Assembly (NCBI GenBank): GCA_964252035.1
Contig: OZ176203.1
Source: Podarcis erhardii
Taxonomy: Eukaryota
Direction: 5' to 3' (one strand)
DNA length: 64,000 nucleotides
The notes below the pieces were generated by a model. That model saw only the letters and a list, made by a program, of their open reading frames with translations. It made no database searches and had not been told where the DNA came from. Below are positions 10,207 to 52,507 of the stretch, one piece after another. A program made the translations under genes and the position numbers. How positions within the stretch are numbered: position 1 is the stretch's first letter; each line of letters opens with the position of its first letter.

Positions 10207-10218
10207 ATGCGTCCCAAG
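10207..10218 (+). CDS. CD200: CD200 coding exon 1 (MRPK)
   Basis: agcATGcgtcccaag|gtaaga: 12 coding nt and a strong donor, phase 0. Same 12-nt first coding exon as I recall for human CD200. Confidence 0.75.
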
Positions 10219-10593
10219 GTAAGATGCTTGCTGTGATGCAAGTCCAAGGCACAAGCTTGGGGATTTGTCTCCGAACATAGGGAGAAAGTAAAGAGAAAGT
10301 GCCTGCATGTTCTCAAATGAGGCTGAAATTGGTGTTTGCTTAAATCGGTCCAAAGCCGTACTGCCTGAATTCAGTTTGCCTCCGGCATTCAATTAGCTCA
10401 AGAGTAGTGGCGCAATTAGTTTTAGCCTCTGGATTCAAATAGGCTTACGAGGGGCACATCTCACTTTAGATAGTCATGAGGCGTGTGCTCACTTCAAAAT
10501 GTGGTAATCCAAGATTGCTGCATTTGGAAGCCCTTCTGCTCGGCTGCCTGGAGTGCGGCCCAGCCCTGCCCTGGCGATGCCATTGCTCAGGAG

Positions 10594-11285
10594 CAGGGCC
10601 AGGTTAAGGTTTGATGAGGCCCTAAGCTACTGAAGATAATGGGGCCCTTTATATGTCCAGCTGTCCTTTGTCAACAATAAATTGTCGCTGTTTTTGTGTG
10701 TTGAATATATGCTATATGGTAATTGATGGACCTAATAGATATCTAAAGCCATTTGCACATAACGAAATAGGTATTTTATCAAAGTAATTGTTGAACTAAA
10801 ATACAATTAAGAAGTATATTAATAGTGAAATAATTACTAAGCTCTAACTTAAAATGATTTTTTATTCATAACAAACTTAACAATGCAAACATCAAAGAGG
10901 AAAGCAGACAGCATATCTGCTAAATAAATCTTCTGGGAAAACAACTTTGTCAGTGGCTAAATTCCTTTTCCTGGCACTCAAGTGTCGGAAATGTATAACT
11001 GAATGCCTTGATGTGGGTTATCTGTGAGAGGTTTAGTACTGTGGCCCTATCTTATTTATGTACCCCTATGATGTTTTAGTTTATAATTCTGTATTGTGTT
11101 TTATTTCTGACTATCGGTCGAATAAAGGAAATTTACAATGCAAACACATTGTCATTTGGCAATAACAAAAGTTCCTTTAGAAACACAATTTACACATTTT
11201 TTTTCCTTTAATTTTTTTTTGGGGGGGCCAAGAGAGTGGGGGCCTAAACTATAGTTTGTTTAGCTTATACATAAATTTGGCACTG
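10594..11285. mobile_element. Non-autonomous hAT DNA transposon
   Basis: Ends cagggccagg / tttggcactg; perfect 8-bp TSD ctcaggag (10586-10593, 11286-11293). Confidence 0.85.
10892..11134 (+). mobile_element. Non-LTR retrotransposon 3' fragment nested in the hAT element
   Basis: 12-bp duplication acaatgcaaaca (10880-10891, 11135-11146). ORF remnant TLSVAKFLFLALKCRK...*, then a 3'UTR ending in AATAAA. Clade not resolved. Confidence 0.55.
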
Positions 11286-13090
11286 CTCAGGAGAAGCACA
11301 AAGGTGCTTTTATGACTGCAATGTTCCACATGCTTAACTGAAAGGTAAATCTTACTGAACTGCATGAGATTCAGGGTGCTTCTAGGTGGGGACCTAGTAA
11401 TGCAAACAGGTATTTGACTCCTGGGTTTCCCACCCCCACCCCCCAAAAAGACTGAATATGGATTAAAACTGAGGGGCAGATATGGGGAGAGGGGAATATG
11501 ACAAAGATGTTGTGTGGTTGCAGCAAAAACAATGGCACACATGAGAATCGCTAAACCCACACTCTTGCTTATAAGTAAGATCGTGTTTATGTATAGGATT
11601 ATTTTCACACTTTGGCAAGAAAAAAAAGAAAAGAAAAGAAAAGCCATCACCCTTGTCTTCTAGTGAATGTAATAGGAATATTTGAAGCATGAACATGAGA
11701 AATGCAGAACAGGATTTGAGTTCCATGGAGCCTGATCCTATTCTTTCTTATGCAGAAGCAAATCCTACTGTGTTCAATGGGGCTAGGTCACAGATAAATG
11801 TGCAACAGAGTTGCAACCTTTTTGTTTTTGAATCCTTTTGGTGCTATCTGTGTGTATGTGTGAATACTGTTAATGTGGGGTAGAAACTAATGAAGACCAC
11901 AAATTTTAGACAGGTTATACCCTTGGGGGTGATGTTGTAATATTAGTAAGTCTGCTTGACTCATGTAGTGGTTTCCTAGGTTGAACAGGCTCTGTGCAGT
12001 TTAGATTTCAAGCATGACTGTTTATGGTACTAAAATCCATCAACCCCAACTTCTCATCATTTCCAAGGGTTATATCATTACTGTATTATTCTGGGTGCTA
12101 TTTCCATAACGTCACTAACATAGTTACTGGCAGGAGATTTCACATATAAATCTCCTGGGTCTGCACTCAAAATCACTGCTGTGGTCTGAAATTCTTATCC
12201 CATTCTTTAATATGCACTGCATGGTTTTAATTCTGATCTATTATTGTGGTTTCAATTGCTTTTTATGTAAATTCTTGACTTTATAATTGGGTTTGGAGTG
12301 AGATGGTTCTATATTTTTTATTGTTGTGACATTTCAATTTGTTAGTCACATTGGGTTTCTTTGAAAATTAAGCAGCACATACATTTTATTTTAAAAATAC
12401 ATGAACTGCAAGCTGTGTAAATAAATTGCTGTTTTTATCTACTATTTAACTGGCCCAATTATGACAAAAAAATTGATTAAAGTGTGTTATCTGGTAAGTA
12501 ATCTGCATGCAGGTATGGTTTCAAATGTGCACCTACAGAGGAAAGTTTTAAAAGCTTAGAGGACTCACAGAAATAGACACTCTCTCCAAATCTAGGTTCA
12601 AAAGCTGATGTTGGGAAGTCAAATGAAACTATCTTTAAGTGAAGAAATGGCTGGACATTTATAATATAAACACCGAAGTGTCTTGTAGCACCTAAAAGAT
12701 ACATCCATTTATCTCCGGTACACTTCCAAACACCAGGAACCACTTCATAGGATGCATTTGCATCTATTTGTGGACTCTGATCCACAAAAGCTTATGCCAG
12801 AATAAATTTGGCAGTCTTTAAGATGTCACAAGGGTATTTTGTTTTGCTTTTTTTTGTTTGTTTGTTTCTTTGCTGCAGCATACCTACTTAGAGATTGGGT
12901 TGGCATGCAACAACGCTCTCCTAAATTATTTGCATTGCACATTTGACCGTAATGTGTATGGTTCACTTTCTTACAATGTTTAAAAAGATTTGGAAAACAT
13001 GGGCAAAAGGAAATAATGGTATTATTTGGTTTTCATTTTTTCCTTGCCAAGGCATTTTAAATACTGTATGTAAGTTAATTTTATTTAAAT

Positions 13091-13361
13091 CAGTTACAGA
13101 TAGGTAGCCGTGTTGGTCTGCCATAGTCAAAACAAAATAAAAAAATTCCTTCCAGTAGCACCTTAAAGACCAACTAAGTTAGTTCTAGGTATGAGCTTTC
13201 GTGTGCATGCACACTTCTTCAGATACACTGAAACAGAAGTTTCAGTGTATCTTCTGTTTCAGTGTATCTGAAGAAGTGTGCATGCACACAAAAGCTCATA
13301 CCTAGAACTAACTTAGTTGGTCTTTAAGGTGCTACTGGAAGGATTTTTTTTATTTTGTTTT
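13091..13361. mobile_element. Penelope-like element terminus in fold-back (inverted) arrangement
   Basis: Arms about 13129-13239 and 13251-13361 are near-perfect reverse complements; left arm identical to the Penelope end starting at 16195. Confidence 0.9.
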
Positions 13362-15044
13362 TATTTTAATCAGTGTAGGTTATTTATTTGCAGCTTGTTC
13401 AGTATGAGAAGGTGGGCTTCGTTCCTAGAAGGCGGTGTAGAGGGTTCGAGTTTACAACACTTTCGATGTGTTAATATATATTTTTCGACTGGTCCTACCA
13501 ATAAACATCATTAGAACCATGCTGCAGATGTGCTTTAAGTTCCACTGTCATTAACAAGTCATTGTCTGCAATCACAGGGCAATAAATCCCTCTGGAATCA
13601 GTGGTGATTGTAAACGCATTTTAGTGGGACAAGCCAATGAATGGAAAGAAACTGCTTAGCATGATGCAGTTTACAACCCCCTCTCCAAATAAATCTGTTG
13701 GAGGGTCAGTTGTGGTGCTTAATCTGTGCCTTCATCTATGCTGAAGGGGAAAGGTTGCAGTGCAGTCCCAGATTCAATCTCTGGGATCTCCAAGATGGGC
13801 TGACCTGACAAGAGATCCCAGCCTCAAAGCCTGGAGAGCTGACAACACTGGATCACCACTGCATTAGCAGGCAGCTTCCAGTGTCCTTTGTTCAACCTTA
13901 ATATGTGTAAATAAGCACAGATGTAAAGATCTAATAATTTTCTTCTGAGGGGAACCTAACCTGGGTGTTGCAGCCAGGAGTTTTGCACTGCTTGGAGAAA
14001 GGGATTGATCATGTTTTGACACTGAGCCAATCCAAAAGTTCTAAAGGTGGGGATTAATCTATTAGTGCTCATTCACACATGCGCATCACCGCTTGGTGCA
14101 AAAGATAGTCAACGTGTCAAGCACTGTGTGTGTGTGCCTGTCATATGAAGGAGAACAAAATGTGTTAGGGTTTTGAGATTCTAGAAATACATTCTGCAAT
14201 AACACAAATCACATTGCTTGCTTTTCTTTCTCACTTCTGACATCCTGTTAATCCCTCTCCCTTTATTGTGCCAGCTCTCTTGAGGGAACGTTTTGCCACT
14301 GAGATACTGACTAGATTTAGTTTCCATTGACCTTAAAGGCATTAACTACCCACTGCTCATTTTGTTTTTCTTTTGAGAAGTAGTTTGCTTGCCCCATTGT
14401 TCCTTGTTATTCTTCTCCCAGATGCTTCCTTCCTTGATGCTGAAGCTGAAATGCCTATCTTCCTTTAAGTTTCCACCCACAACACATCCTTTTCTTAACA
14501 ATTATCTCATTTCCTTTTGATAATAAGTCTGTTCCTTAATCATATTTAATCCTTGTCAGTAGCTGGCATAACATAATGATTAAGAGACTGAATTACAGAT
14601 TGAGATACATCAAGTTTCACCACTGCCATGTGCTCACTTGGTGATCTTAAACCAGCCTGTAGTATTGTGGAGGAGTTTTAATACTGGTTTACCATAGATA
14701 GCTGCTGTAAGCACTACAACTAGAACATGAACACGAAGAGCTCAGAATGTATGAAAGCGCTACACATTTTGTGCAGTGTTTTGTGATTTAGAATACAGGG
14801 CTTAATTGGAGCCCAGGGGTTTTCTGAGTCTCATCACCAGAATAACTTCTTCCAATGCTAGGGCCTGGAGTTGAACATGAGAAGTAACAATGTGAAAAAA
14901 TACTTTCCCTGATAAAATTGACAGTCTCCAACTGCCTACTCAATCCCAAAATTTACAATCTCAATCTGCTGACTCAGTTCATATATCTACCAACTCCATC
15001 TTCTGACTTAGGCTGAATAAACATCATACATGTAAAGCACATTA

Positions 15045-15423
15045 TTATTATTATTATTATTATTTATTAAATTTGTATTCCACCTTCATCCAAAGATAAG
15101 AGGGCAGTTCACAACATAAAAAATACAAAATGAGAACACAAAATTCAAAATACATAATAACAACGAGAACAAAAGCAAACCAATAGCCCTTAGCATGCTA
15201 ATCAGCCAAAGGCCTGGTTCTGGAGAAACGTTTCCGCCTGGTGCCTAAAGATATGTAATGAAGGCACCAGACAAGATTCCCTAGGGAGAGCATTCCACAA
15301 ACAGGGGGCCCTGCAGAAAGGCTTGTACTTGTGTTGCCACCCTCTGGACCAATCATGAAGGAGGTCCTCAGATGATTATTGCAGAGTCCAAGTTGATTCA
15401 TATGGAGAGAGGCTGTCCTTGAG
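15045..15423 (-). mobile_element. L2-type LINE 3' fragment
   Basis: (TTA)n tail plus aaaggcctgg...gcctggtgcctaaaga...gagagcattccac motif shared with the 49432 copy. Confidence 0.7.
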
Positions 15424-15727
15424 GCACATGACTTCAAAGCACATGACTTTCCCCAAAGAACCATGGGAACTGTAGTTTACACCAGAGAGCTATAACTCCC
15501 AGCACCCTGAACATGCTACAATTCCCGGGATTCTTTGTGGAAATTGATATGCATCCGATGCATATTAAATGCATGGTATGTATGCAGCATAGTTCCAATC
15601 ACTTAGCTAAATCGTAGCTCTCTGTGGTGTGTTCTAAAAATAGTGGTTTAGAAAGCTTCCACACAAGGTTAGCAGGCTGGACTGCCACTGGCCCTCCTGA
15701 AATTTAAGAATCAAAACCCACTGCATT

Positions 15728-15864
15728 AGGGATAACCAATGTTGTGCCCTACAGATGCTGTAGGACTGCAACTCCCTTCATCCCTGACCACTGGCCGTGC
15801 TTACTGAGGCTGATGGGAGTTGGAAGTCCAACAACATTTGGGTAGCACCACATTGCCAGCTCCT
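15728..15864. mobile_element. Short palindromic hAT-type MITE (about 135 bp family)
   Basis: caactccc...gggagttg internal inverted symmetry; same family at 24735, 35399, 44455, 59385. Ends approximate. Confidence 0.55.
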
Positions 15865-16472
15865 GCATTGCATGATAAGCTCCTCTACCAAATTTCTACT
15901 CTATGCAAGGAGAAGAAGTTTAATAAAAAACAACAACAACACAGCCCTGTTTCCTCTTTATCTGTTGATGGGGCATTCTCAGATTTTACAGTCGTCATTT
16001 CATAAACAGAAAACACTTCTGCTAGGAAATCCCATGAAACCAATGAGGATCACATGTAATCATTTTGAATGTTTGTACATCACGGCACAGAAATATACAT
16101 GCACTGGGAAACTAAAGCCTGTCATAGCTTCCCAGGTTGTACATGCTGCAAAACACCAATGAGGTCAAGTCTCATTAGTGACAGTCCATAGGTGAAAACA
16201 AAATAAAAAAATTCCTTCCAGTAGCACCTTAAAGACCAACTAAGTTAGTTCTAGGTATGAGCTTTCGTGTGCATGCACACTTCTTCAGATACACTGAAAC
16301 AGAAGTCACCAGACCCTTCTAAATAGTGGGAAGGTGGGGAGGGGTATTACTCAGAAGGGTGGTGGGAATGGGTGATTGGCAGATAGCTGTGATGAGCCTG
16401 TTGACGACTCTTAACGACTGCAATAGGTCTTACAGGAAAAAGCAAGGGGTGAGAAGGTGAAAAATGGCTTTG

Positions 16473-16791
16473 TCATGTATAATGAGATAAGAATCCAATG
16501 TCTTTGTTAAGACCAGGTCTCTCCATGGTTTTAAGTTTGGTAATAAGTTGCAATTCAGCAGCTTCTCTTTCCAGTCTATTTCTGAAATTCCTTTGTAATA
16601 GAACAGCTACTTTGAGATCTTGTATAGAATGTCCTGGGAGATTGAAATGTTCTCCTACTGGTTTCTCTGTCTTGTGATTCCTGATGTCAGATTTATGTCC
16701 GTTTATCCTTTGGCGTAAGGTTTGGGCTGTTTGTCCAATATAGAGAGCTGAAGGACACTGTTGGCATTTGATGGCATACACAATGTTAGAC
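16473..16791 (-). pseudogene. Penelope GIY-YIG endonuclease C-terminal portion
   Basis: SNIVYAIKCQQCPSALYIGQT...RINGHKSDI...HFNLPGH...ERE...GLN*, no internal stops. Confidence 0.92.
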
Positions 16792-16869
16792 CAGTGTTTC
16801 CCAACCGGTGTTCCGCAGCACACTAGTGTGCCGCGACACGTTGCCTCGTGTGCCGCTTGGGAAACACTG

Positions 16870-17105
16870 CTCTAAGCGAGAGGGGACTCTGCTCAGGCTG
16901 CATCCGCCGTGCGCGAGGGAGGCGCTTCCTCTCGTGAGGGAGGCGAGAAGAAGGGAGGCGGGGCCGAGCAGGCGGATTGGCCCGGCGGCGGCCGTGACGT
17001 CACCCTGCGCGCGGCGGCAGATTCGAAACTCCTCAGGCGCAGGCGCGGCTGGAGCAGGAAGGCCGCTCTGCTTGAGAGGAAAGAGAGGGAGCCGCCGCCG
17101 CCCGG
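16870..17105 (+). promoter_or_regulatory. Captured CpG-rich cell-cycle-type promoter/5'UTR (CENPW-derived)
   Basis: GC box 16953-16965, ATTGG 16976-16980, TGACGTCA 16995-17002, GGCGG-caga-TTCGAA (CDE/CHR spacing) 17013-17027, NRF1-like 17037-17047; no ATG before 17106. Confidence 0.75.
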
Positions 17106-17168
17106 ATGAAGAACACCGTTCCGCGGAGCACCGTGAAGAAGCTGCTGAGCAAGCACAAGCCGCACTTG
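17106..17168 (+). pseudogene. CENPW: Captured N-terminal fragment of centromere protein W
   Basis: MKNTVPRSTVKKLLSKHKPHL aligns to recalled chicken CENP-W MRRTVPRGTLRKIIKKHKPHL; similarity stops abruptly after HL. Confidence 0.85.
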
Positions 17169-18068
17169 CCTCAGGGTCTTACTGCCCACCCGCCTCTGTT
17201 TCCTTGCTGTGCTTGCTCAAACGGAACAAAGAGCAGGGAAAGCCCCTCCCCTCCAGGCAAGCAGGCAGGAGGGAGAGAGAGAGAGAGAGAGAGAGAGCGT
17301 GCGAGCTGGCTGGCTTGGGTGAGTAGGTGAGGGAAAACTTTTGCCTTCCTTTCCTCCCTCCCCGTTATACCCCTCTCCTGCATTCTTAGCCAGCTGCTTC
17401 TCTGCACACCCCTCTCGTGCTCCTTGTCCGTTCTGTGTTTTTCCTTCCCTCCCCACTTAAAATGTGGTTTAAAAGCATGGATCCACATGGATCCTCAGGA
17501 TCTTTGCATTGGGTCACCCCAAATTCACCATCAGATCACATAGCATGTCCATGGCTACAGCCTGCCCCCCCAAAATCACACACCCACTGTTGCCTGGGGC
17601 TGCAATGGTGCAAAAACGTGGTTACAAAACATGGATCCACAGGGATTCTCAGGATTTTTGCATTGGGTCACCCCAAATTCACCATCAGATCACATGTCTG
17701 TGGCCACAGCATGAAGCACAAAAATGATACATCATTAATATTCACTGCCCACGGCGGCAGCCAATCGGCTGCCGCAAAGGGCGGGCCCTCACAGGTTCAC
17801 TGAATAAAGTATTTTATAATTTTTCATATTTCTGTTTACTTACTATTTCATAATAAAGTAATTATAAAATACTTTATTTGTGTTTATTTGATTCCTATTA
17901 AAGAGAGTTACTTTATATATAGTCAATATAGGCACAGAGTTAATTTTTTAAACATTTTCTAATGGTGGTGTGCCTCGAGATTTTTTTCATGAAACAAGTG
18001 TGCCTTTGCCCAAAAAAGGTTGGGAAACACTGTGTTAGACGATGAGCAATTAAATAGTCCCGAGATGG

Positions 18069-19905
18069 ACTTCCGGGTTGACGCGATCGGATTAATGGCG
18101 GATTCCCTCCGAGCTCCGGGGGGAATCGGCTCCGCTGAGAACGGGTCTTGCCGCGCCGGCGACGCGGGGACCCTTAGAAACCACAGGTGCGGATACCTGT
18201 GGACCTGGTGACTCGGTGGGCACCTTAAGCGCCCTCCTCGACAGTCAAAGAGCCTTTTTAAAGGCTGCGGAGAAGGTACGAGGAGTGGCGTGGTGCTGAG
18301 AGTAGACCGCTACCTCAGTGGAGTGAAGCCGCAAGCCATTGCCGGAGAGCGTCAACTTTCTTCCCGAAATTTGGACCGAAAGTAAACACCCCGTGAGTAA
18401 AGGAAATTCGATCTTTAAAAGAAATTTTATCCCTAATCTGGCGACCGGGGGGGACGTGCTAAAGGGAAGTCCGCACCCCCCCTCATACAGACAATTTAAA
18501 GCAAGGAGCGAAAGCCTAAGATCAGAGAGGAATAATCTCGTGTCTTTCGGAGATTGACAGAGACTTTATCAATTTACGTGAACAAGTCGTTTTTTTTTTC
18601 TAAGCTGTGCTGGAGGAAAGAGGAGAGTTTCAGAAAATTTCTGTGTACCCCCCCCCCCGAACCCGGGAGTACCCTGTAACAGCCTAGCGCGAAAGAACAG
18701 AGTTTTGACAGCTGTCAAGTGAGCTGTCAAACGGCAGGACTAAGAGAACTGTATTACTTTATATCTTTTGGATTTACAAAGTGTTTTATTCAACTAGAAG
18801 TGGTTGGAAACAAAGTAAATAACGAGCTAAAAAGACTGTTGGTACAGAACTTTAACAATGGCAATCCCTCTAGAGGGGACTGGAGACATTACAATGGCTG
18901 CAGAAGGAAAACTACTAGCAGAAATAGAAAGAGCCTTCTTTCTCGTGGGAACTTTACAAGAGCAAGCTATGATTATGGATAAACAGTTGATGACCTTGAT
19001 CTCTAAGACAAGTAATCCTGCTGATGGAAGGAAGGAATTGACTCTGGAAGATTCTGCAGCTGAACCAGAAAAGATATCTTTGGAGTTGGAGGAAAAACAG
19101 GTCGAAGGGGAGAAAGTACAGTTGTTAAACTTCTTACAGGACTCTTTGCAGCCAAGGAACAGAGAAGCCCTTTGGACTACAAGTCATGGAGAGAGAGAAG
19201 CAAGGGAGGAAGCCGCTGGACACAATAAAAGATGGGAAATTAAAAAAACAAAGAAATACAACTGGGGCTTCCTCCTCTTTTCTGGAATTGATGACTTGGG
19301 ACTTTGGGGACCTTTGGCAGAACCTTGGCACCAAGTCCTTCTAATTAGGATTGATCTGAGAAAGGATGAAGAGACCTCCCGAGACTTGAAGACCAATAAA
19401 ATGGATTACCAACAGAACAGGCAGGGAGAGACTGAAATAGACTTAAAGGCCTCTGACGTGAGAAATCCGGGCTAGGGATTTTAGAAGAGGACAGTTATTT
19501 TGGAAGGGACAGATACCTGGGCAGGGAGGGAAGGGGAAAAAGTAGAATTTAAAATTTTAGGATTTTTGGGTCTTTTTTTTATAATGTTGACTCATATTTT
19601 AATAAAAAAAGGGTAATTTTTGGTATAAGAATTTTGATTGATCTTAGAATAAGGATCTAATGTATATAAGTAAAAGATTATTGAATTGGGCCTAACAAAA
19701 AGAATCAAATTTAAACATAATAAGAATAGGATTGGGGAAGGAAATAAGAACTTGCTGAATTTAATATGGAAATTGGGATGTATGGGGGGGGGCGGGGGAA
19801 GTCAGGGAAAGAGGGTTATGAAAGCAAAGATATGAAACCATTTATATGTTTGTGTGTGTGTTGTCATAAAATGTGAAAATCCAATAATTTAAAAAAAAAA
19901 AAAAA
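18069..19905 (+). mobile_element. 1837-bp L1-related non-autonomous element (half-L1-like)
   Basis: 18-bp TSD taaatagtcccgagatgg (18051-18068, 19906-19923); (gg)acttccgg CpG-rich 5' end as in squamate L1s; one ORF; polyA at 19891-19905; no RT/EN. Confidence 0.8.
18858..19475 (+). CDS. 205-codon open ORF of the half-L1-like element (second ATG at 18894); putative ORF1 derivative
   Basis: Uninterrupted ORF, Glu/Lys-rich and helical-looking N-terminal half; I recognise no domain. Confidence 0.5.
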   Translation: MAIPLEGTGDITMAAEGKLLAEIERAFFLVGTLQEQAMIMDKQLMTLISKTSNPADGRKELTLEDSAAEPEKISLELEEKQVEGEKVQLLNFLQDSLQPRNREALWTTSHGEREAREEAAGHNKRWEIKKTKKYNWGFLLFSGIDDLGLWGPLAEPWHQVLLIRIDLRKDEETSRDLKTNKMDYQQNRQGETEIDLKASDVRNPG

Positions 19906-20748
19906 TAAATAGTCCCGAGATGGTATGTGTGATGTTGTTGGGGCCAGTAATGGTGTTGTCCGGGTGTATGTGGCAGCAAAGTTGGCATCTGGGTTTATTG
20001 CAGGCTCTGGTGCCAGTGTCCGTGTTAAGTCTGGTAGTAGTATTATTGTGGGTTAGGAGTTGTTTAAGATTGGGTGGCTGTCTGTAGGCAATGAAAGGTC
20101 TTCCTCCCAGAGCTTGAGAAAGAGAACTGTCATTGTCCAGGAGAGGTTGTAGATCTCTGATGATGCGTTGTACTGTTTTAACTTGGGAGCTGTATGTGAT
20201 GACTAGAGGTGTTCTGTTATTTTCTTTTTTGGGTCTGTCTTGCAGCAAGTTCTCTCTGGGTATCAGTCTGGCTCTGTTGATCTGTTGTCTAACTTCATCT
20301 GCTGGGTATTTTAGTTCTAAAAAGGTTTGCTGTAGATCTCTTAGGTGAGAGTCTCTGTCTGTAGAATTGGAACAGATGCGGCTGTAACGTAGTGCCTGGC
20401 TATATACAATGGACTGTTTGGTATGTTTGGGATGGTAGCTAGAGGCATGTAGATATGTTTGTCGGTCAGTTGGTTTACAGTATAAGGTGGTGTCTATGCG
20501 CCTATCCTGTATTTTTATAGTAGTGTCCAAAAAATGTATTTCTTGCATAGATTGATTCATTGTTAGGTTGATTGTGGGGTGAAAATCATTGAATTTCTGG
20601 TGGAAGGTGTCCAGGGTCTGTTGACCATGTGTCCAGATGATAAAAATATCGTCAATGTATCGCAGGTACAAGAGAGGTTTGAGTGGGTAGGAGTTTAGGA
20701 AACGTTGTTCTAAATCTGCCATGAAGATGTTGGCATACTGTGGGGCCA
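19906..20748 (-). pseudogene. Penelope reverse transcriptase C-terminal portion and linker
   Basis: APQYANIFM...YLRYIDDIFIIW...FLD...LYCKPTD...SSYHP...RICS; no stops; joins in frame to the GIY-YIG part once inserts are removed. Confidence 0.93.
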
Positions 20749-21128
20749 ACAGGAATTTTTTTATTTTGTTTTGACTATGGCAGACCAACACGGCTACCTA
20801 TCTATAACTAGTCCATAGGTGGATTTCAACTTCCCCACTATTTAAAGAAATGGGTAAAGTACGGTATGTACAATGTGAAGTAGCCTTCAGGCCAATGACC
20901 TGCCATTTGTTAGTTCTTAGCTAGACATGGAAAAGCTTCACTGCTTGTCTTGGGGAGTTTTGTCTGCTATGGCAACATTTTGAAAATCCCCTGATATGGT
21001 TGCAGTGGAACAACAGCCTCTTTCTTCATTATGCACCTGGGCTATACCCAAAATCCAAATAGTAGAGCATTGCGGTGGCAAAAAAGGCTATTGTGTATCT
21101 GTAACACATCTCTTTTTTCTATTCCTAG

Positions 21129-21210
21129 TTAAATGAAGGTCTCTGTTCCCCATGGACGTTCCAGGGCCTGACTCTGTGCATCATATGTATTGTTCTCTGT
21201 AGGATAAAGG
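21129..21210 (+). CDS. CD200: CD200 exon 2 (signal peptide)
   Basis: tcttttttctattcctag| 82 nt |gtaagt, phase 0 to 1; LNEGLCSPWTFQGLTLCIICIVLCRIKG. Confidence 0.88.
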
Positions 21211-22175
21211 GTAAGTCTAACATGATTAGTGCATTGGGGAAAGTGTAATGACTAGGCAAGGGTGGCTCAAGACATTTTGCCACCTGAGGCAATGGACAAC
21301 ATGGTACACACACACACTCTTGATATTGAGTAGCCAGCTGGACTGACTGCTGAATCCTAATTCAGTACTAGCAATGGGGCACTGCACTGTCCTGGAGGGA
21401 GGTCAGCACCATACTTGTAAGGCTGGAGCCCCACAGCTCTCAGCTCCAACAGTATGGACAGGGATATCAGGAGGAAGAGCTAAGGGCTGCCACCACCTCC
21501 CATCTTATGGCACCTGCAGCAGTCACCTCATTCTACCTAATGGTAGAGCCAGACCTTTGGCTATGAGCCAGTAGACCAGCAAGTGTGGCTGGCAGAGGGC
21601 TATGGAGAGTCTTGTGTTGCTGTGAGCAGGATGGGCTTCTATTTTGAGTCAAAGAAATGTATTTTTTTGGCATCTGTCTGTCTCAGGAGACAATGGAGGA
21701 GCACGCTTTGAGGGATGAAGTCAAACTGTTGGAAGGTTGCAGCGCCTGCTGTGGAGAGATATGTTTTGTTGCAGGTCAGGCAGATGAAGGCATCTGGTTG
21801 TGCTGCTACAAATGAACCATAGTGTTTCTTTTCTCTGTGCTCCTCCCAGTGGCCTTTCATCTTCTGGTCACTGCACAGACACACACAGAGCTGCCTTGTG
21901 AGGTTAAATAAGGTATGCAGCAACCCTCTTCCCCAAATTGTTCCTACCATGAATTTCAGAAAGGCTTCCTTTTCCCTCCACCTATCCAGTGAAAGGTATT
22001 AAAAAATGAAAGAAAAATATTTTGGAATTAGCAGCCCAGTTCTAATCTGTTCATGGTTGCTAGAAGTGCAGAACAGGAATTTTTGCATAAATAAATATTT
22101 TCCTTGGATCTAGACCAAGGGATTTGTAAGCATAAGATACGAGAGGTGATTATTAATTATTTTGTCTTGCCGCAG

Positions 22176-22502
22176 GTGCCATATTGACAAGTGACAGAGA
22201 CGTGGAGCTGGGCGGCAACGCTACTTTGAGATGTACCCTAACAGAATCTCTTCAAACTGTTCAAGTTACATGGCAGCAAGAGGTTAATAAAAACGCTGTA
22301 AATTTGGCAGCATATGGCAACAAACAAATTCCAAATATTAACGACCGATACAAAGGTCGAGTCAATTTAACAATTTTTGAACTCAATGACACTGCCATCA
22401 GCTTCTGGAATGTTAGCACCGAAGAAAATGGTTGTTACCGATGCATATTTAACATATTTCCTCCAGGATCCAATAGCAAAAAAACTTGTCTTTCTGTTTA
22501 CG
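22176..22502 (+). CDS. CD200: CD200 exon 3 (IgV domain)
   Basis: 327 nt, phase 1-1; ATLRC...VTWQ...FWNVS...GCYRCIFNIF...TCLSVY, including the extra F/G-strand Cys pair characteristic of CD200. Confidence 0.95.
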
Positions 22503-23506
22503 GTGAGTCATTTCATATTAAAATAGCTAGAGCAGGGCATTTCTTCAAATATGCTCCTTTGATAATGAAGCAATACAACACACACCATTATCTCACCCCC
22601 GTTCCAGGGGCGCAAGACTTGCCCAAGTTTGCTTTCCTTAGGAAGGGTGTTACAAGAGCCCTACAGCATTTCCTAATACTTGGTTTCATCCAACAATATA
22701 ACTACCGATTGAGTATAATTGGAACTACAGCTTAAACCACAGGTGGTGAACCTGTGGTCCTTCAGTTGATGTTGGACTATAACTCCTACGATCCATGAGC
22801 ACGCTAGCTGCAGATTATGAGAGCAAAACCTGATGGTCTAAGGTTACAATATCCACAGCAGATCGGAGGCAGTATATTTCCAGTTGCCCAGGTCCTGCCT
22901 GTGGACTTCCTGTGGGCATCTGATTGGCTACTGTGAGAGCAGAATGCTGAACTTGATAGGTCATTGATCCATTAGGTTCTTATATTCTTCTATGCTGATA
23001 TGGGGAGTGGAACAGGACACTAAGAAGCTCCGGGGACCAAAAGCTCAGCTTGGTGTCTGATCTCCATCTGCCTCAAAACTGCAGGCTTCTCCTTTTGTTT
23101 CCCTGTATATACAGAGACCTGGATCACAACATTTGTTAACTGTGCAGGAGGATCTGTCCCCTTCTCTCATAATTCTTCCGATTCAGAACATTCCCAAATC
23201 TTTTGTTAGCAATGGACTAAGCAATTTGTTGCTATGGCAACATATTCCTGAACAATTAACAAGTCCAAGGTTCTGGCCTGTTATGCCACAGAGAAACTCA
23301 CACTAACGGAAACCCCTTTGTAAAACTGAATAGAAATCAGCCCACTGTGTAATAATGTTACAACATATGTTTTAGTTTTCAGCCAGAATATTGCAGTGTG
23401 GGACATTGGGCTTTTCCACATGTACGGTGTGTTGAATAACACACTATAGCACACTACAGTTGAAGGATGATTGCTCAAAGTTAACATAAGTTTCCTACCA
23501 TATAGT

Positions 23507-23864
23507 AGGAAAGTAGTAGTAAAGGGACCCCTGACCATTAGGTCCAGTCATGGCCGACTCTGGGGTTGCGGTGCTCATCTCTCTTTATTGGCTAAGGGAG
23601 CTGGCGTACAACTTCCGGGTCATGTGGCCAGCATGACTAAGCCACTTCTGGGAAACCAGAGCAGTGCACGGAAATGCCATTTACCTTCCTGCCGGAGTGG
23701 TACCTATTTATCTACTTGCACTTTGACGTGCTTTCAAACTGCTAGGTTGGCAGGAGCAGGGACTGAGCAACGGGAGTTCACCCCATTGCAGGGATTCGAA
23801 CCGCCAACCTTCTGATCGGCAAGTCCTAGGCTCTGTGGTTTAACCCACAGCACCACCCGTGTCC
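23507..23864 (-). mobile_element. Sauria SINE, full length
   Basis: Complete head and body; flanked by ttcctaccatatagt-like target copies. Confidence 0.92.
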
Positions 23865-23880
23865 TTTTTCCTACTATATA

Positions 23881-24228
23881 AGGTAAAGGTAAAGGGACCC
23901 CTGACCATTAGGTCCAGTCATGACCGACTCTGGGGTTGCGGCGCTCATCTCGCTTTATTGGCCGAGGGAGCCGGCATACAGCTTCCGGGTCATGTGGCCA
24001 GCATGACTAAGCCGCTTCTGGCGAACCAGAGCAGCACACGGAAACGCCGTTTACCTTCCCGCTGGAGCGGTACCTATTTATCTACTTGCACTTCGTGCTT
24101 TCGAACTGCTAGGTTGGCAGGAGCAGGGACCGAGCAACGGGAGCTCACCCCATCGCGGGGATTCGAACCACCGACCTTCTGATTGGCAAGTCCTAGGCTC
24201 TATGGTTTAACCCACAGCGCCACCCGCG
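23881..24228 (-). mobile_element. Sauria SINE, full length (tandem to previous)
   Basis: Complete element with (ACCTTT) tail. Confidence 0.92.
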
Positions 24229-24377
24229 TTCCTACCATATAGTCTGCCTCTAATTCAACAGTTTGCAGTTTGCCCTGCTGAGTCCCTCACTGATACAGTA
24301 GCATCTTTTCATCTTCCTTTTATTGCCCACCTGCGGTCCTTATGGTGAAGCATTTTGTGCCGTCATTTATGTCACAG

Positions 24378-24641
24378 GCCGCCTCAACACATTTTTACAC
24401 TACAGCATCTCTGATGGGCGCTTGAATGCCACCTGCTCAGCAACGGGCTTCCCACGTCCCAACATCACATGGGTTGCGCCAAGAGGCCTGAAGGAGGAAC
24501 ACGAGATCACAAATCCCAATGGAACAGTATCGGTCATAAGCAATATCCTTGTAAATGCCTCAGATAGCCATTCTGGACAAGAGATGATCTGCAAGGTTAC
24601 ACACAGGGGGAAAGAGATGGATCTCAAGGTACCAAGAAAAG
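24378..24641 (+). CDS. CD200: CD200 exon 4 (IgC2 domain)
   Basis: 264 nt, phase 1-1; LHY...NATCSATGFPRPNITW...NPNGTVSVIS...ICKVTHRG; donor g|gtaagt. Confidence 0.95.
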
Positions 24642-25455: not shown

Positions 25456-25550
25456 GCTATCCATATGCTGTGGTCGTAACTGTACTTGTCCTAATTTCTC
25501 TGACTGTGGTTATTATTGCGGTGTGCTGCTGGAAACGACACCAAAAATAG
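25456..25550 (+). CDS. CD200: CD200 exon 5 (TM and very short tail, stop TAG)
   Basis: ctttcctccatatag|; GYPYAVVVTVLVLISLTVVIIAVCCWKRHQK*; the WKRH motif matches human CD200. Confidence 0.92.
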
Positions 25551-28802: not shown

Positions 28803-29173
28803 GGGGGACGTGGGTGGCGCTGTGGGTAAAACCTCAGTGCCTAGGACTTGCCGATCAGAAGGTCGGCGGTTCGAATCCCCGCGGTGGGGTGAGCTCCCGT
28901 CGTTCGGTCCCAGCTCCTGCCCACCTAGCAGTTCGAAAGCACCCCTAAGTGCAAGTAGATAAATAGGTACCGCTTTATAGCGGGAAGGTAAACGGCGTTT
29001 CCGTGTGGTGCGCTGGTGCTGGCTCGCCAGCTACAGCTTCGTCACGCTGGCCACGTGACCCGGAAGTGTCTTCGGATGGCACTGGCTCCCGGCCTCTTGA
29101 GCAAGATGAGCGCGCAACCCTAGAGTCGGTCACGACCGGCCCGTACGGGCAGGGGTACCTTTACCTTTACCTT
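28803..29173 (+). mobile_element. Sauria SINE (different subfamily), full length
   Basis: 13-bp TSD taagctctactga (28790-28802, 29174-29186); (ACCTTT)n tail. Confidence 0.93.
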
Positions 29174-40664: not shown

Positions 40665-40830
40665 NNNNNNNNNNNNNNNNNNNNNNNNNNNNNNNNNNNN
40701 NNNNNNNNNNNNNNNNNNNNNNNNNNNNNNNNNNNNNNNNNNNNNNNNNNNNNNNNNNNNNNNNNNNNNNNNNNNNNNNNNNNNNNNNNNNNNNNNNNNN
40801 NNNNNNNNNNNNNNNNNNNNNNNNNNNNNN
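40665..40830. other. Assembly gap (166 N)
   Basis: Seen directly. Confidence 1.
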
Positions 40831-52216: not shown

Positions 52217-52507
52217 NNNNNNNNNNNNNNNNNNNNNNNNNNNNNNNNNNNNNNNNNNNNNNNNNNNNNNNNNNNNNNNNNNNNNNNNNNNNNNNNNNNN
52301 NNNNNNNNNNNNNNNNNNNNNNNNNNNNNNNNNNNNNNNNNNNNNNNNNNNNNNNNNNNNNNNNNNNNNNNNNNNNNNNNNNNNNNNNNNNNNNNNNNNN
52401 NNNNNNNNNNNNNNNNNNNNNNNNNNNNNNNNNNNNNNNNNNNNNNNNNNNNNNNNNNNNNNNNNNNNNNNNNNNNNNNNNNNNNNNNNNNNNNNNNNNN
52501 NNNNNNN
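52217..52507. other. Assembly gap (291 N)
   Basis: Seen directly. Confidence 1.

What the first reader, a model, noticed from the sequence alone, without database searches (positions are those of the whole stretch)
17106..21210. Captured CENPW start codon can splice in frame into CD200 exon 2
Seen: the ORF from ATG 17106 stays open for exactly 71 codons to a strong donor TGG|GTGAGT at 17318/17319 (phase 0), and CD200 exon 2 starts in phase 0. Splicing would give a 326-aa CENPW/transposon-CD200 chimera that replaces MRPK with 71 aa ahead of the signal sequence. The (GA)n tract at about 17273-17297 lies in this exon, so its length would switch the frame. Entirely a prediction; phase match alone has a 1 in 3 chance.
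Basis: inference. Interest (0 to 1): 0.75.

Follow-up and report, generated by a model that had tools for sequence, protein, structure and literature searches.

The report
Transposon-borne CENPW start inside lizard CD200 intron
A young jumping-gene insertion carrying the on-switch and first 21 codons of the cell-division gene CENPW sits inside the first intron of a wall-lizard CD200 immune gene and could on paper splice in frame to CD200, but nothing shows that it does.

Summary
ATG 17106 opens a 71-codon frame that ends at a donor TGG|GTGAGT (17318/17319). CD200 exon 2 (21129-21210) starts in phase 0. A (GA)12.5 tract lies at 17273-17297. By arithmetic the chimera would be 326 aa.

The CENPW piece (16883-17169) is a real DNA-level capture, 95.9% identical to the true CENPW locus of Podarcis muralis. 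It covers 226 bp upstream of the ATG plus 21 of the 31 exon-1 codons. It lies inside a 1.24-kb non-autonomous hAT element with terminal inverted repeats and an 8-bp target duplication. That element is nested in a Penelope-like retroelement.

The whole 4.6-kb block (16195-20808) is missing from CD200 intron 1 of P. muralis, P. raffonei and Zootoca, so it is lineage-specific and young.

The splicing claim stays untested. No RNA run of the window's own species was available. The four runs I laid come from lizards whose CD200 differs from the window by 4-5%. They show only the normal exon 2-3 junction and true CENPW mRNA.

The donor is a cryptic transposon site, not CENPW's own. The phase match is a 1-in-3 coincidence.

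The scan has already noted the same CENPW-hAT hybrid elsewhere in this genome, in DOCK and SLC23A2 introns. The closest known system is the bat HelibatN3 exon trap.

The parts
10207..10218 (+). CD200 exon 1 coding part (MRPK), donor AAG|GTAAGA at 10218/10219
   Evidence: Unique pattern match, sequence read, and orthologous proteins that begin MRPK.
10219..21128 (+). CD200 intron 1 (10.9 kb)
   Evidence: Bounded by exon 1 and exon 2. Collinear with the P. raffonei, Zootoca and P. muralis loci except for the 4.6-kb block.
16195..20808 (-). Lineage-specific 4.6-kb insertion: a Penelope-like retroelement carrying two nested insertions
   Evidence: Absent from the orthologous intron of P. raffonei, Zootoca and P. 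muralis. Minus-strand ORFs hit GIY-YIG (E 1.5e-6) and RVT_1 (E 1e-4).
16792..18032 (+). Non-autonomous hAT-type element. Terminal inverted repeats at 16792-16817 and 18007-18032; 8-bp target duplication TGTTAGAC at 16784-16791 and 18033-18040
   Evidence: Repeat families I2 and D2 and sequence read. Empty-site joints 16783->18033, with 8 letters shared by both sides, in contigs of other Penelope copies. No transposase domain.
16883..17169 (+). Captured CENPW fragment: 223 bp upstream of the ATG (226 bp in the parent, which has 3 more letters) plus 21 codons and 1 nt
   Evidence: 95.9% identity over 290 aligned columns to L001:4775-5064, the true CENPW locus of P. muralis. No other CENPW exon in the window. 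CpG observed/expected 0.99.
17041..17318 (+). Predicted chimeric first exon. The start is inferred only from where parental CENPW mRNA contigs begin
   Evidence: Parental contigs begin at window-equivalent 17041-17049. The only ATG in this stretch is at 17106. No transcript from this copy was seen.
17106..17318 (+). 71-codon open frame: 21 CENPW codons plus 50 transposon-derived codons
   Evidence: Only residues 1-21 match CENP-W. No Pfam family.
17273..17297 (+). (GA)12.5 microsatellite inside the predicted exon, encoding RERERERE
   Evidence: The reads tool masked 17253-17321 as repeat.
17316..17324 (+). Donor-like site TGG|GTGAGT, phase 0
   Evidence: It is the first site after the ATG that matches at least 7 of 9 consensus positions.
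17324..17332 (+). Competing donor-like site TAG|GTGAGG (exon end 17326, phase 2, out of frame)
18051..19905 (+).
   Evidence: Joints 16790/16791->19906 carry only GATGAGCAAT (= window 18041-18050) between the two sides. The 205-aa ORF has no Pfam hit.
21129..21210 (+). CD200 exon 2 (signal-sequence exon, 27 codons + 1 nt)
   Evidence: RNA contigs join 21209/10 to 22175/76.
22176..22502 (+). CD200 exon 3 (IgV domain)
   Evidence: V-set domain, E 1e-10. Boundaries. Spliced contigs in X3 and X5.
24378..24641 (+). CD200 exon 4 (second Ig domain)
   Evidence: tblastn to P0009 and P0002; boundaries read.
25456..25550 (+). CD200 exon 5 (transmembrane segment, short tail, stop codon)
   Evidence: 100% match to residues 229-259 of the orthologs; boundaries read.

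Best explanation
This is a young, lineage-specific transposon pile-up in intron 1 of an intact CD200 gene of a Podarcis-like lizard.

Shown:
- A Penelope-like retroelement inserted in antisense orientation.
- A non-autonomous hAT element then inserted into it.
- That hAT element carries a DNA-level copy of the CENPW core promoter, 5'UTR and first 21 codons.
- The copy points the same way as CD200.
- The CENPW frame happens to stay open through 50 codons of transposon sequence to a cryptic consensus donor.
- The phase of that donor matches the CD200 exon 2 acceptor.

Inferred: the in-frame path is a coincidence of a multi-copy element landing in one of three possible phases, not a selected feature. 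In the animal the copy is most likely silent, or at best a minor source of transcripts, so CD200 is made essentially only from its own exon 1.
For: - Capture and breakpoints.
- hAT terminal repeats, 8-bp target duplication and empty-site joints.
- The 4.6-kb block is absent from three related genomes.
- CD200 is intact at 259 codons with canonical splice sites.
- The real CENPW exon-1 donor was not captured; the parental exon 1 has 31 codons.
- An open frame is expected in 20% of shuffles, and a phase-0 donor before the first stop in 4%.
- The captured ATG has C at position -3 where the parent and all CENPW mRNA contigs have G.
- No chimeric protein appears among CD200 relatives of 106-336 aa or CENPW-like proteins of 39-124 aa in the protein collection.
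- Earlier notes of this scan report about 25 near-identical copies of the hybrid, so an in-phase intronic copy is expected by chance (not tested here).
Against: - The captured segment keeps CpG observed/expected 0.99, against 0.31 for the rest of the element. Only 2 of its 9 substitutions are CpG-decay changes. This fits a promoter that has stayed unmethylated.
- The CCAAT, CRE and CHR-like motifs are intact.
- The donor is the first strong one after the ATG. Apart from a site only 71 nt past the donor (17390), the native exon-2 acceptor is the only strong acceptor-like site downstream.
- A bat Helitron of comparable design, carrying its parent gene's own donor, does trap exons (PMC4778049).
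- No RNA of the right species was examined, so silence is not shown.
Confidence: 0.62

Rival explanations
1. The element works as a mobile exon trap. The captured CENPW promoter fires in dividing cells. The transcript uses the 17318 donor and the CD200 exon 2 acceptor. A 326-aa protein is translated whose 71-aa, probably disordered, extension precedes the CD200 signal sequence. That sequence then acts as an internal signal or anchor, so CD200 is still displayed, now under cell-cycle control.
For: - The promoter motifs and CpG density are intact.
- There is a single ATG in the predicted exon, followed by the first consensus donor in phase 0.
- Apart from a site only 71 nt past the donor (17390), the native exon-2 acceptor is the only strong acceptor-like site downstream.
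- Precedent: HelibatN3, with the NUBPL promoter, 6 codons and a splice donor, splices to downstream acceptors experimentally and in bat transcriptomes (PMC4778049).
Against: - No transcript evidence of any kind.
- Weak Kozak context, with C at position -3.
- The frame depends on a mutable (GA)n tract.
- Multi-copy transposons are usually silenced (general knowledge).
- The insertion is too young for conservation to speak.
- A 71-aa extension may impair signal-sequence function (inference).
Confidence: 0.18
2. The captured promoter is active but yields only non-coding or unproductive RNA. Transcripts use the out-of-frame donor at 17326, or run on to the AATAAA signals in the hAT element, or are removed by nonsense-mediated decay. 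They may mildly interfere with CD200 transcription.
For: - A second donor-like site, matching 7 of 9 positions, lies 8 nt downstream in phase 2.
- AATAAA signals lie at 17803, 17852 and 17897 on the + strand.
- In the bat precedent, the bona fide element-driven transcripts mostly gained new 5'UTRs or were non-coding.
Against: No RNA evidence for any transcript from this copy. Donors close to a transcription start usually suppress downstream intronic poly(A) signals (general knowledge).
Confidence: 0.15
3. The stretch is the real CENPW gene, or an RNA-derived retrocopy of it, rather than a transposon capture.
For: The first 21 residues are 100% identical to P. muralis CENP-W.
Against: - The true gene, with all three coding exons, lies on another chromosome record in P. 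muralis.
- No further CENPW exon exists in the 47 kb downstream.
- The copy includes about 160 bp upstream of the mRNA start and stops in mid-exon, so it is not a retrocopy.
- It lies between hAT terminal repeats with a target duplication.
Confidence: 0.01

Closest known systems
HelibatN3 Helitron of vespertilionid bats (captured NUBPL promoter, six codons and splice donor), Grabundzija et al. 2016, PMC4778049
   Same: Both are non-autonomous DNA transposons that picked up a host gene's promoter, start codon and a few N-terminal codons. Both were amplified. Both can sit in sense orientation in introns, where a donor inside the element faces the next host acceptor.
   Different: This element is a cut-and-paste hAT, not a rolling-circle Helitron. 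The parent gene is CENPW. Its exon-1 donor was not captured, so the donor is a cryptic site 149 nt into transposon sequence. Copy number is in the tens rather than thousands, and that figure comes from earlier notes, untested here. For HelibatN3 the trapped transcripts were demonstrated; here none has been seen.
Pack-type transposons (Pack-MULE, Pack-CACTA, Pack-hAT) of plants, e.g. PMC8903248
   Same: A non-autonomous terminal-repeat element carrying a fragment of a host gene whose parent is elsewhere in the genome.
   Different: The host is a vertebrate. The cargo is chiefly a promoter with a short coding stub rather than internal exons. I read only the title and abstract of that paper.
Transposon-initiated alternative first exons (gene-TE chimeric transcripts)
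   Same: An intronic transposon would supply the transcription start, first exon and donor to a host gene.
   Different: In the known cases the promoter is usually the transposon's own, such as an LTR or L1 antisense promoter, and the junction is seen in RNA. Here the promoter is a stolen host CpG island and the junction is only predicted.

Membership tests
Pack-type non-autonomous hAT transposon | Terminal inverted repeats | tested here: met
   Arms of 26 nt at 16792-16817 and 18007-18032, 81% complementary, with outermost letters CAGTGTTTCCCAAC.
Pack-type non-autonomous hAT transposon | 8-bp target-site duplication and a demonstrable empty site | tested here: met
   TGTTAGAC on both flanks. 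Contigs of other Penelope copies join 16783 to 18033 with 8 letters shared by both sides.
Pack-type non-autonomous hAT transposon | No transposase of its own | tested here: met
   The ORFs within 16792-18032 are short, and the two longest have no Pfam family.
Pack-type non-autonomous hAT transposon | Internal fragment of a host gene whose parent lies elsewhere | tested here: met
   16883-17169 is 95.9% identical to the CENPW locus on another chromosome record of P. muralis.
Pack-type non-autonomous hAT transposon | Mobilised after capture (several copies of the hybrid) | not tested
   Known only from earlier notes s1-263131 and s1-241315. There is no second copy in this window or in the fetched loci.
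Transposon-borne promoter / exon trap (HelibatN3 type) | Captured promoter including the transcription start | tested here: met
   The capture reaches 223 bp upstream of the ATG. Parental CENPW mRNA contigs begin inside it, at window-equivalent 17041-17049. This is a sequence-level test only; activity is not shown.
Transposon-borne promoter / exon trap (HelibatN3 type) | Start codon followed by a splice donor inside the element, in sense orientation within a host intron | tested here: met
   ATG 17106 and donor 17318/19, on the same strand as CD200 and inside its intron 1. The donor is not the parent gene's.
Transposon-borne promoter / exon trap (HelibatN3 type) | RNA that starts in the element and is spliced to the host exon | tested here: inconclusive
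   No such joint appears in four RNA-like runs. However, those runs differ from the window by 4-5% in CD200 exon 3. The two sequenced relatives whose exon 3 differs to a similar degree lack the insertion. The donor also lies in a stretch the tool masked as repeat.
CD200 / OX-2 membrane glycoprotein gene | Signal exon, IgV exon, second Ig exon, transmembrane exon; orthology to annotated CD200 | tested here: met
   V-set domain. 92% identity to P. raffonei CD200 in the IgV exon. All exons found with canonical sites, 259 codons. Locus collinear with three lacertid CD200 loci.
CENP-W protein family (PF15510) | Histone-fold domain | tested here: not met
   Only residues 1-21 are CENP-W. Residues 22-71 are transposon-derived, and the 71-aa frame has no Pfam hit. 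The predicted product would not be a CENP-W family member.

The most novel reading that the evidence does not exclude
The CENPW-hAT hybrid is a cut-and-paste counterpart of the bat HelibatN3 exon trap. It would be a mobile cell-cycle promoter with its own ATG and donor. At CD200 it would give dividing lizard cells (germ line, embryo, regenerating tissue) an extra, in-frame supply of the immune-inhibitory ligand CD200, with an on/off switch set by the length of the (GA)n tract.
Probability: 0.08. Interest if true: 0.7.

Novelty: new member of a known kind. Interest (0 to 1): 0.3.

Why it matters
If the junction were found in RNA, it would be a vertebrate example of a cut-and-paste transposon spreading a host cell-cycle promoter and start codon, rewiring an immune checkpoint ligand. 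It would be caught soon after insertion, while relatives without the insertion still exist for comparison.

As it stands, the value is smaller. The window gives a clean, dated anatomy of one copy of the CENPW-hAT hybrid. It also gives a precise junction to look for (17318 joined to 21129) once RNA of the right species is available.

Tried and rejected
- **Real CENPW gene or retrocopy.** Rejected. There are no further exons in the window, the true gene is elsewhere, and the copy includes promoter DNA and stops in mid-exon.
- **Pfam scan.** The 71-aa frame and the exon-2 peptide gave nothing.
- **Word search with the 71-aa frame.** It found only true CENP-W. It sees only proteins of 39-124 aa, so longer chimeras were out of reach.
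- **Search with the IgV exon (106-336 aa) and the P0002 cluster members.** Only ordinary CD200 proteins turned up, none with a CENPW start.
- **Exact look-up of the 74-aa unspliced ORF in public assemblies.** Not on record.
- **RNA test.** The run search found no run on record as RNA. The four runs laid proved to be RNA of other lizards without the insertion, so the result neither supports nor refutes the claim. The single reads call did not display what lies upstream of exon 2 in the contigs, and the donor sits in a stretch masked as repeat.
- **Other copies of the element.** None found in the window or in loci L001-L004.
- **Large representative protein search.** Not run. At 50% clustering a chimera would hide behind ordinary CD200, and the operators asked that it be used sparingly.
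- **N runs at 40665-40830 and 52217-52507.** Left untouched.
Full report
**1. What is at the coordinates**

- The ATG at 17106 opens a frame of 71 codons that ends at 17318.
- The next six letters are GTGAGT, so the donor-like site is TGG|GTGAGT. It matches 7 of 9 consensus positions and is the first such site after the ATG.
- Read on unspliced, the frame stops three codons later.
- A second donor-like site, TAG|GTGAGG, follows 8 nt later in phase 2.
- The (GA) tract is at 17273-17297.
- No other ATG lies between the likely transcription start and the donor.

**2. The CD200 gene**

- The window carries an intact CD200 (OX-2) gene on the + strand.
  - Exon 1 coding part: 10207-10218 (ATGCGTCCCAAG|GTAAGA).
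  - Exon 2: 21129-21210.
  - Exon 3, IgV: 22176-22502. It matches the V-set domain at E 1e-10.
  - Exon 4: 24378-24641.
  - Exon 5: 25456-25550, including the stop.
- The coding lengths add up to 259 codons.
- Annotated CD200 proteins of P. raffonei, P. muralis, P. lilfordi and Zootoca read MRPK|LNEGLCSPW....
- By arithmetic the chimera would have 71 + 255 = 326 codons.

**3. The CENPW piece is a real capture**

- The first 21 residues are identical to CENP-W of P. muralis. The rest of that 76-aa protein is nowhere in the window.
- The true gene, fetched as L001, has a 31-codon first exon and two further coding exons.
- Window 16883-17169 aligns to L001:4775-5064 at 95.9% identity. This covers 226 bp upstream of the parental ATG, plus 21 codons and one base, after which similarity ends abruptly.
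- The copy includes DNA upstream of the mRNA start and breaks in the middle of exon 1. It was therefore made from DNA, not RNA, and it did not bring CENPW's own splice donor.
- The donor at 17318 lies 149 nt into transposon sequence.
- Contigs of related elements without the capture run into the window at 17167 from a different upstream sequence. This shows that 17167 onward is transposon backbone.

**4. The carrier and its setting**

- The fragment lies in a 1241-bp element (16792-18032).
  - It has 26-nt terminal inverted repeats and an 8-bp duplication, TGTTAGAC, on both flanks.
  - It has no transposase.
- Contigs that join 16783 to 18033, with eight letters shared by both sides, give the empty site.
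- The hAT element interrupts the GIY-YIG endonuclease region of a minus-strand Penelope-like element (GIY-YIG E 1.5e-6; RVT_1 E 1e-4).
- Ten bases further on, a second insertion occupies 18051-19905.
- The whole block 16195-20808 is missing from the otherwise collinear CD200 intron 1 of P. raffonei and Zootoca and of P. muralis.
- Flanking intron DNA is about 96% identical to both Podarcis species, and the CD200 protein matches neither exactly. The window therefore comes from a third, closely related lizard, and the insertion arose in its lineage.
- Cross-species conservation of the frame or donor cannot be tested.

**5. Is the promoter likely to work?**

- The captured part keeps 33 CpGs in 287 nt, an observed/expected ratio of 0.99. 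The parent scores 1.08, and the rest of the hAT element and the Penelope flank score 0.2-0.3.
- Only two of its nine substitutions against the parent are CpG-to-CpA changes.
- The CCAAT box, the TGACGTCA motif and the TTCGAA (CHR-like) motif are intact.
- This fits a CpG island that has not been heavily methylated. The numbers are small and the element is young, so it is a hint only.
- Against efficient translation, the captured ATG has C at -3. The parent has G there, as do three of the four CENPW mRNA contigs; the fourth has a 3-letter deletion at that spot.

**6. RNA evidence**

- The run search found no run on record as RNA. It listed small runs guessed to be RNA that hold 16-30% of the sampled words, and larger runs of unknown kind from three other organism labels that hold 60-84%.
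- I laid four of the small runs on 16750-22650.
- Two of them, X3 and X5, contain contigs that join 21209/10 to 22175/76 with GT..AG ends. They are therefore RNA and express CD200.
- No joint from 17318 to 21129 is listed.
- The contigs over 17041-17169 all stop at 17169. Three of the four carry the parental G at 17103 and the fourth has a deletion there. They are true CENPW mRNA.
- These results cannot refute the claim, for three reasons.
  - The CD200 exon 3 contigs differ from the window at 10-12 of 250 letters. A similar degree of difference separates the window's CD200 from P. muralis and P. raffonei, whose genomes lack the insertion. So the runs very probably come from lizards without it.
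  - The tool masked 17253-17321 as repeat and dropped one joint there in X5.
  - The sequence upstream of exon 2 in the contigs was not among the rows shown.
- With one reads call allowed, I could not go further.
- The protein collection holds no CD200 relative of 106-336 aa with a CENPW start. The unspliced 74-aa ORF is not on record.

**7. Chance**

- In dinucleotide shuffles of the transposon sequence after the capture, the frame stays open for 71 codons in 20% of trials. A phase-0 donor matching at least 7 of 9 positions precedes the first stop in 4%.
- These are properties of the element family.
- For a given sense-oriented intronic copy, the match to the host exon's phase is 1 in 3.
- Earlier notes of this scan report the same hybrid in DOCK and SLC23A2 introns, with about 25 copies in this genome (not tested here). 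An in-phase copy somewhere is therefore expected.
- A crude scan found only two strong acceptor-like sites downstream of the donor. One is at 17390, only 71 nt away; the other is the native exon-2 acceptor at 21129. If the donor were used, exon 2 is therefore the likely partner.

**8. Verdict**

- I put about 0.6 on a silent or trace-level copy whose in-frame path is coincidence.
- I put about 0.2 on a real CENPW-promoter-driven CD200 isoform.
- I put about 0.15 on unproductive transcripts.
- The closest known system is the bat HelibatN3 Helitron, which carries the NUBPL promoter, six codons and a splice donor. It traps downstream exons experimentally and in bat transcriptomes (PMC4778049).
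- This case differs from HelibatN3 in three ways.
  - The transposon superfamily is different.
  - The donor is a cryptic site rather than the captured gene's own.
  - There is no RNA evidence.

Noticed in passing
window 16195-20808: A Penelope-like retroelement on the minus strand (GIY-YIG and reverse-transcriptase ORFs) is a lineage-specific insertion in CD200 intron 1. It is absent from P. muralis, P. raffonei and Zootoca. The flanking alignments overlap by about 12-13 bp, which suggests a target duplication.
   Followed up: partly
window 22176-22502; proteins P0009, P0012, P0002: The CD200 IgV exon evolves fast. The window is about 92% identical to P. raffonei there, and the two P. muralis protein versions differ from each other at six residues, five of them in the IgV region. 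The transmembrane exon is 100% conserved.
   Followed up: partly
window 16976-16981 vs L001 (alignment A1, column 130): The captured copy has an intact inverted CCAAT box (ATTGG), while the P. muralis parental CENPW promoter reads ATTAG at that spot. Either the window species' own parent differs from P. muralis, or the P. muralis promoter lost the box.
   Followed up: no
window 17459-17541 and 17613-17695: An internal 83-nt direct duplication (92% identical, 154 nt apart) lies inside the hAT element. This part of the family is by far the most abundant in the RNA contigs, with word depth in the thousands.
   Followed up: no
window 16786-16875: A short hairpin-like pair lies just inside the left end of the hAT element: 23-nt arms, 91% complementary, 44 nt apart. 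It amounts to an extra inward-facing copy of the terminal repeat, immediately before the capture breakpoint at 16883.
   Followed up: no
window 17189-17335: One RNA contig (X5) skips 17190-17334. Some family members therefore lack the segment that holds the (GA)n tract and both donor-like sites.
   Followed up: no
protein P0010 (Lacerta agilis CD200, 291 aa): The annotated L. agilis protein has a 32-aa N-terminal extension from an upstream in-frame ATG ahead of the usual start, which reads MRLK in that species. Database models with extended N-termini before the CD200 signal sequence therefore exist, but they are unrelated to CENPW.
   Followed up: no
window 23491-24233 and 28805-29173: A repeated segment of about 370 nt occurs twice in tandem in CD200 intron 3 and once inverted downstream of the gene. 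It is also present in the P. raffonei and P. muralis loci.
   Followed up: no
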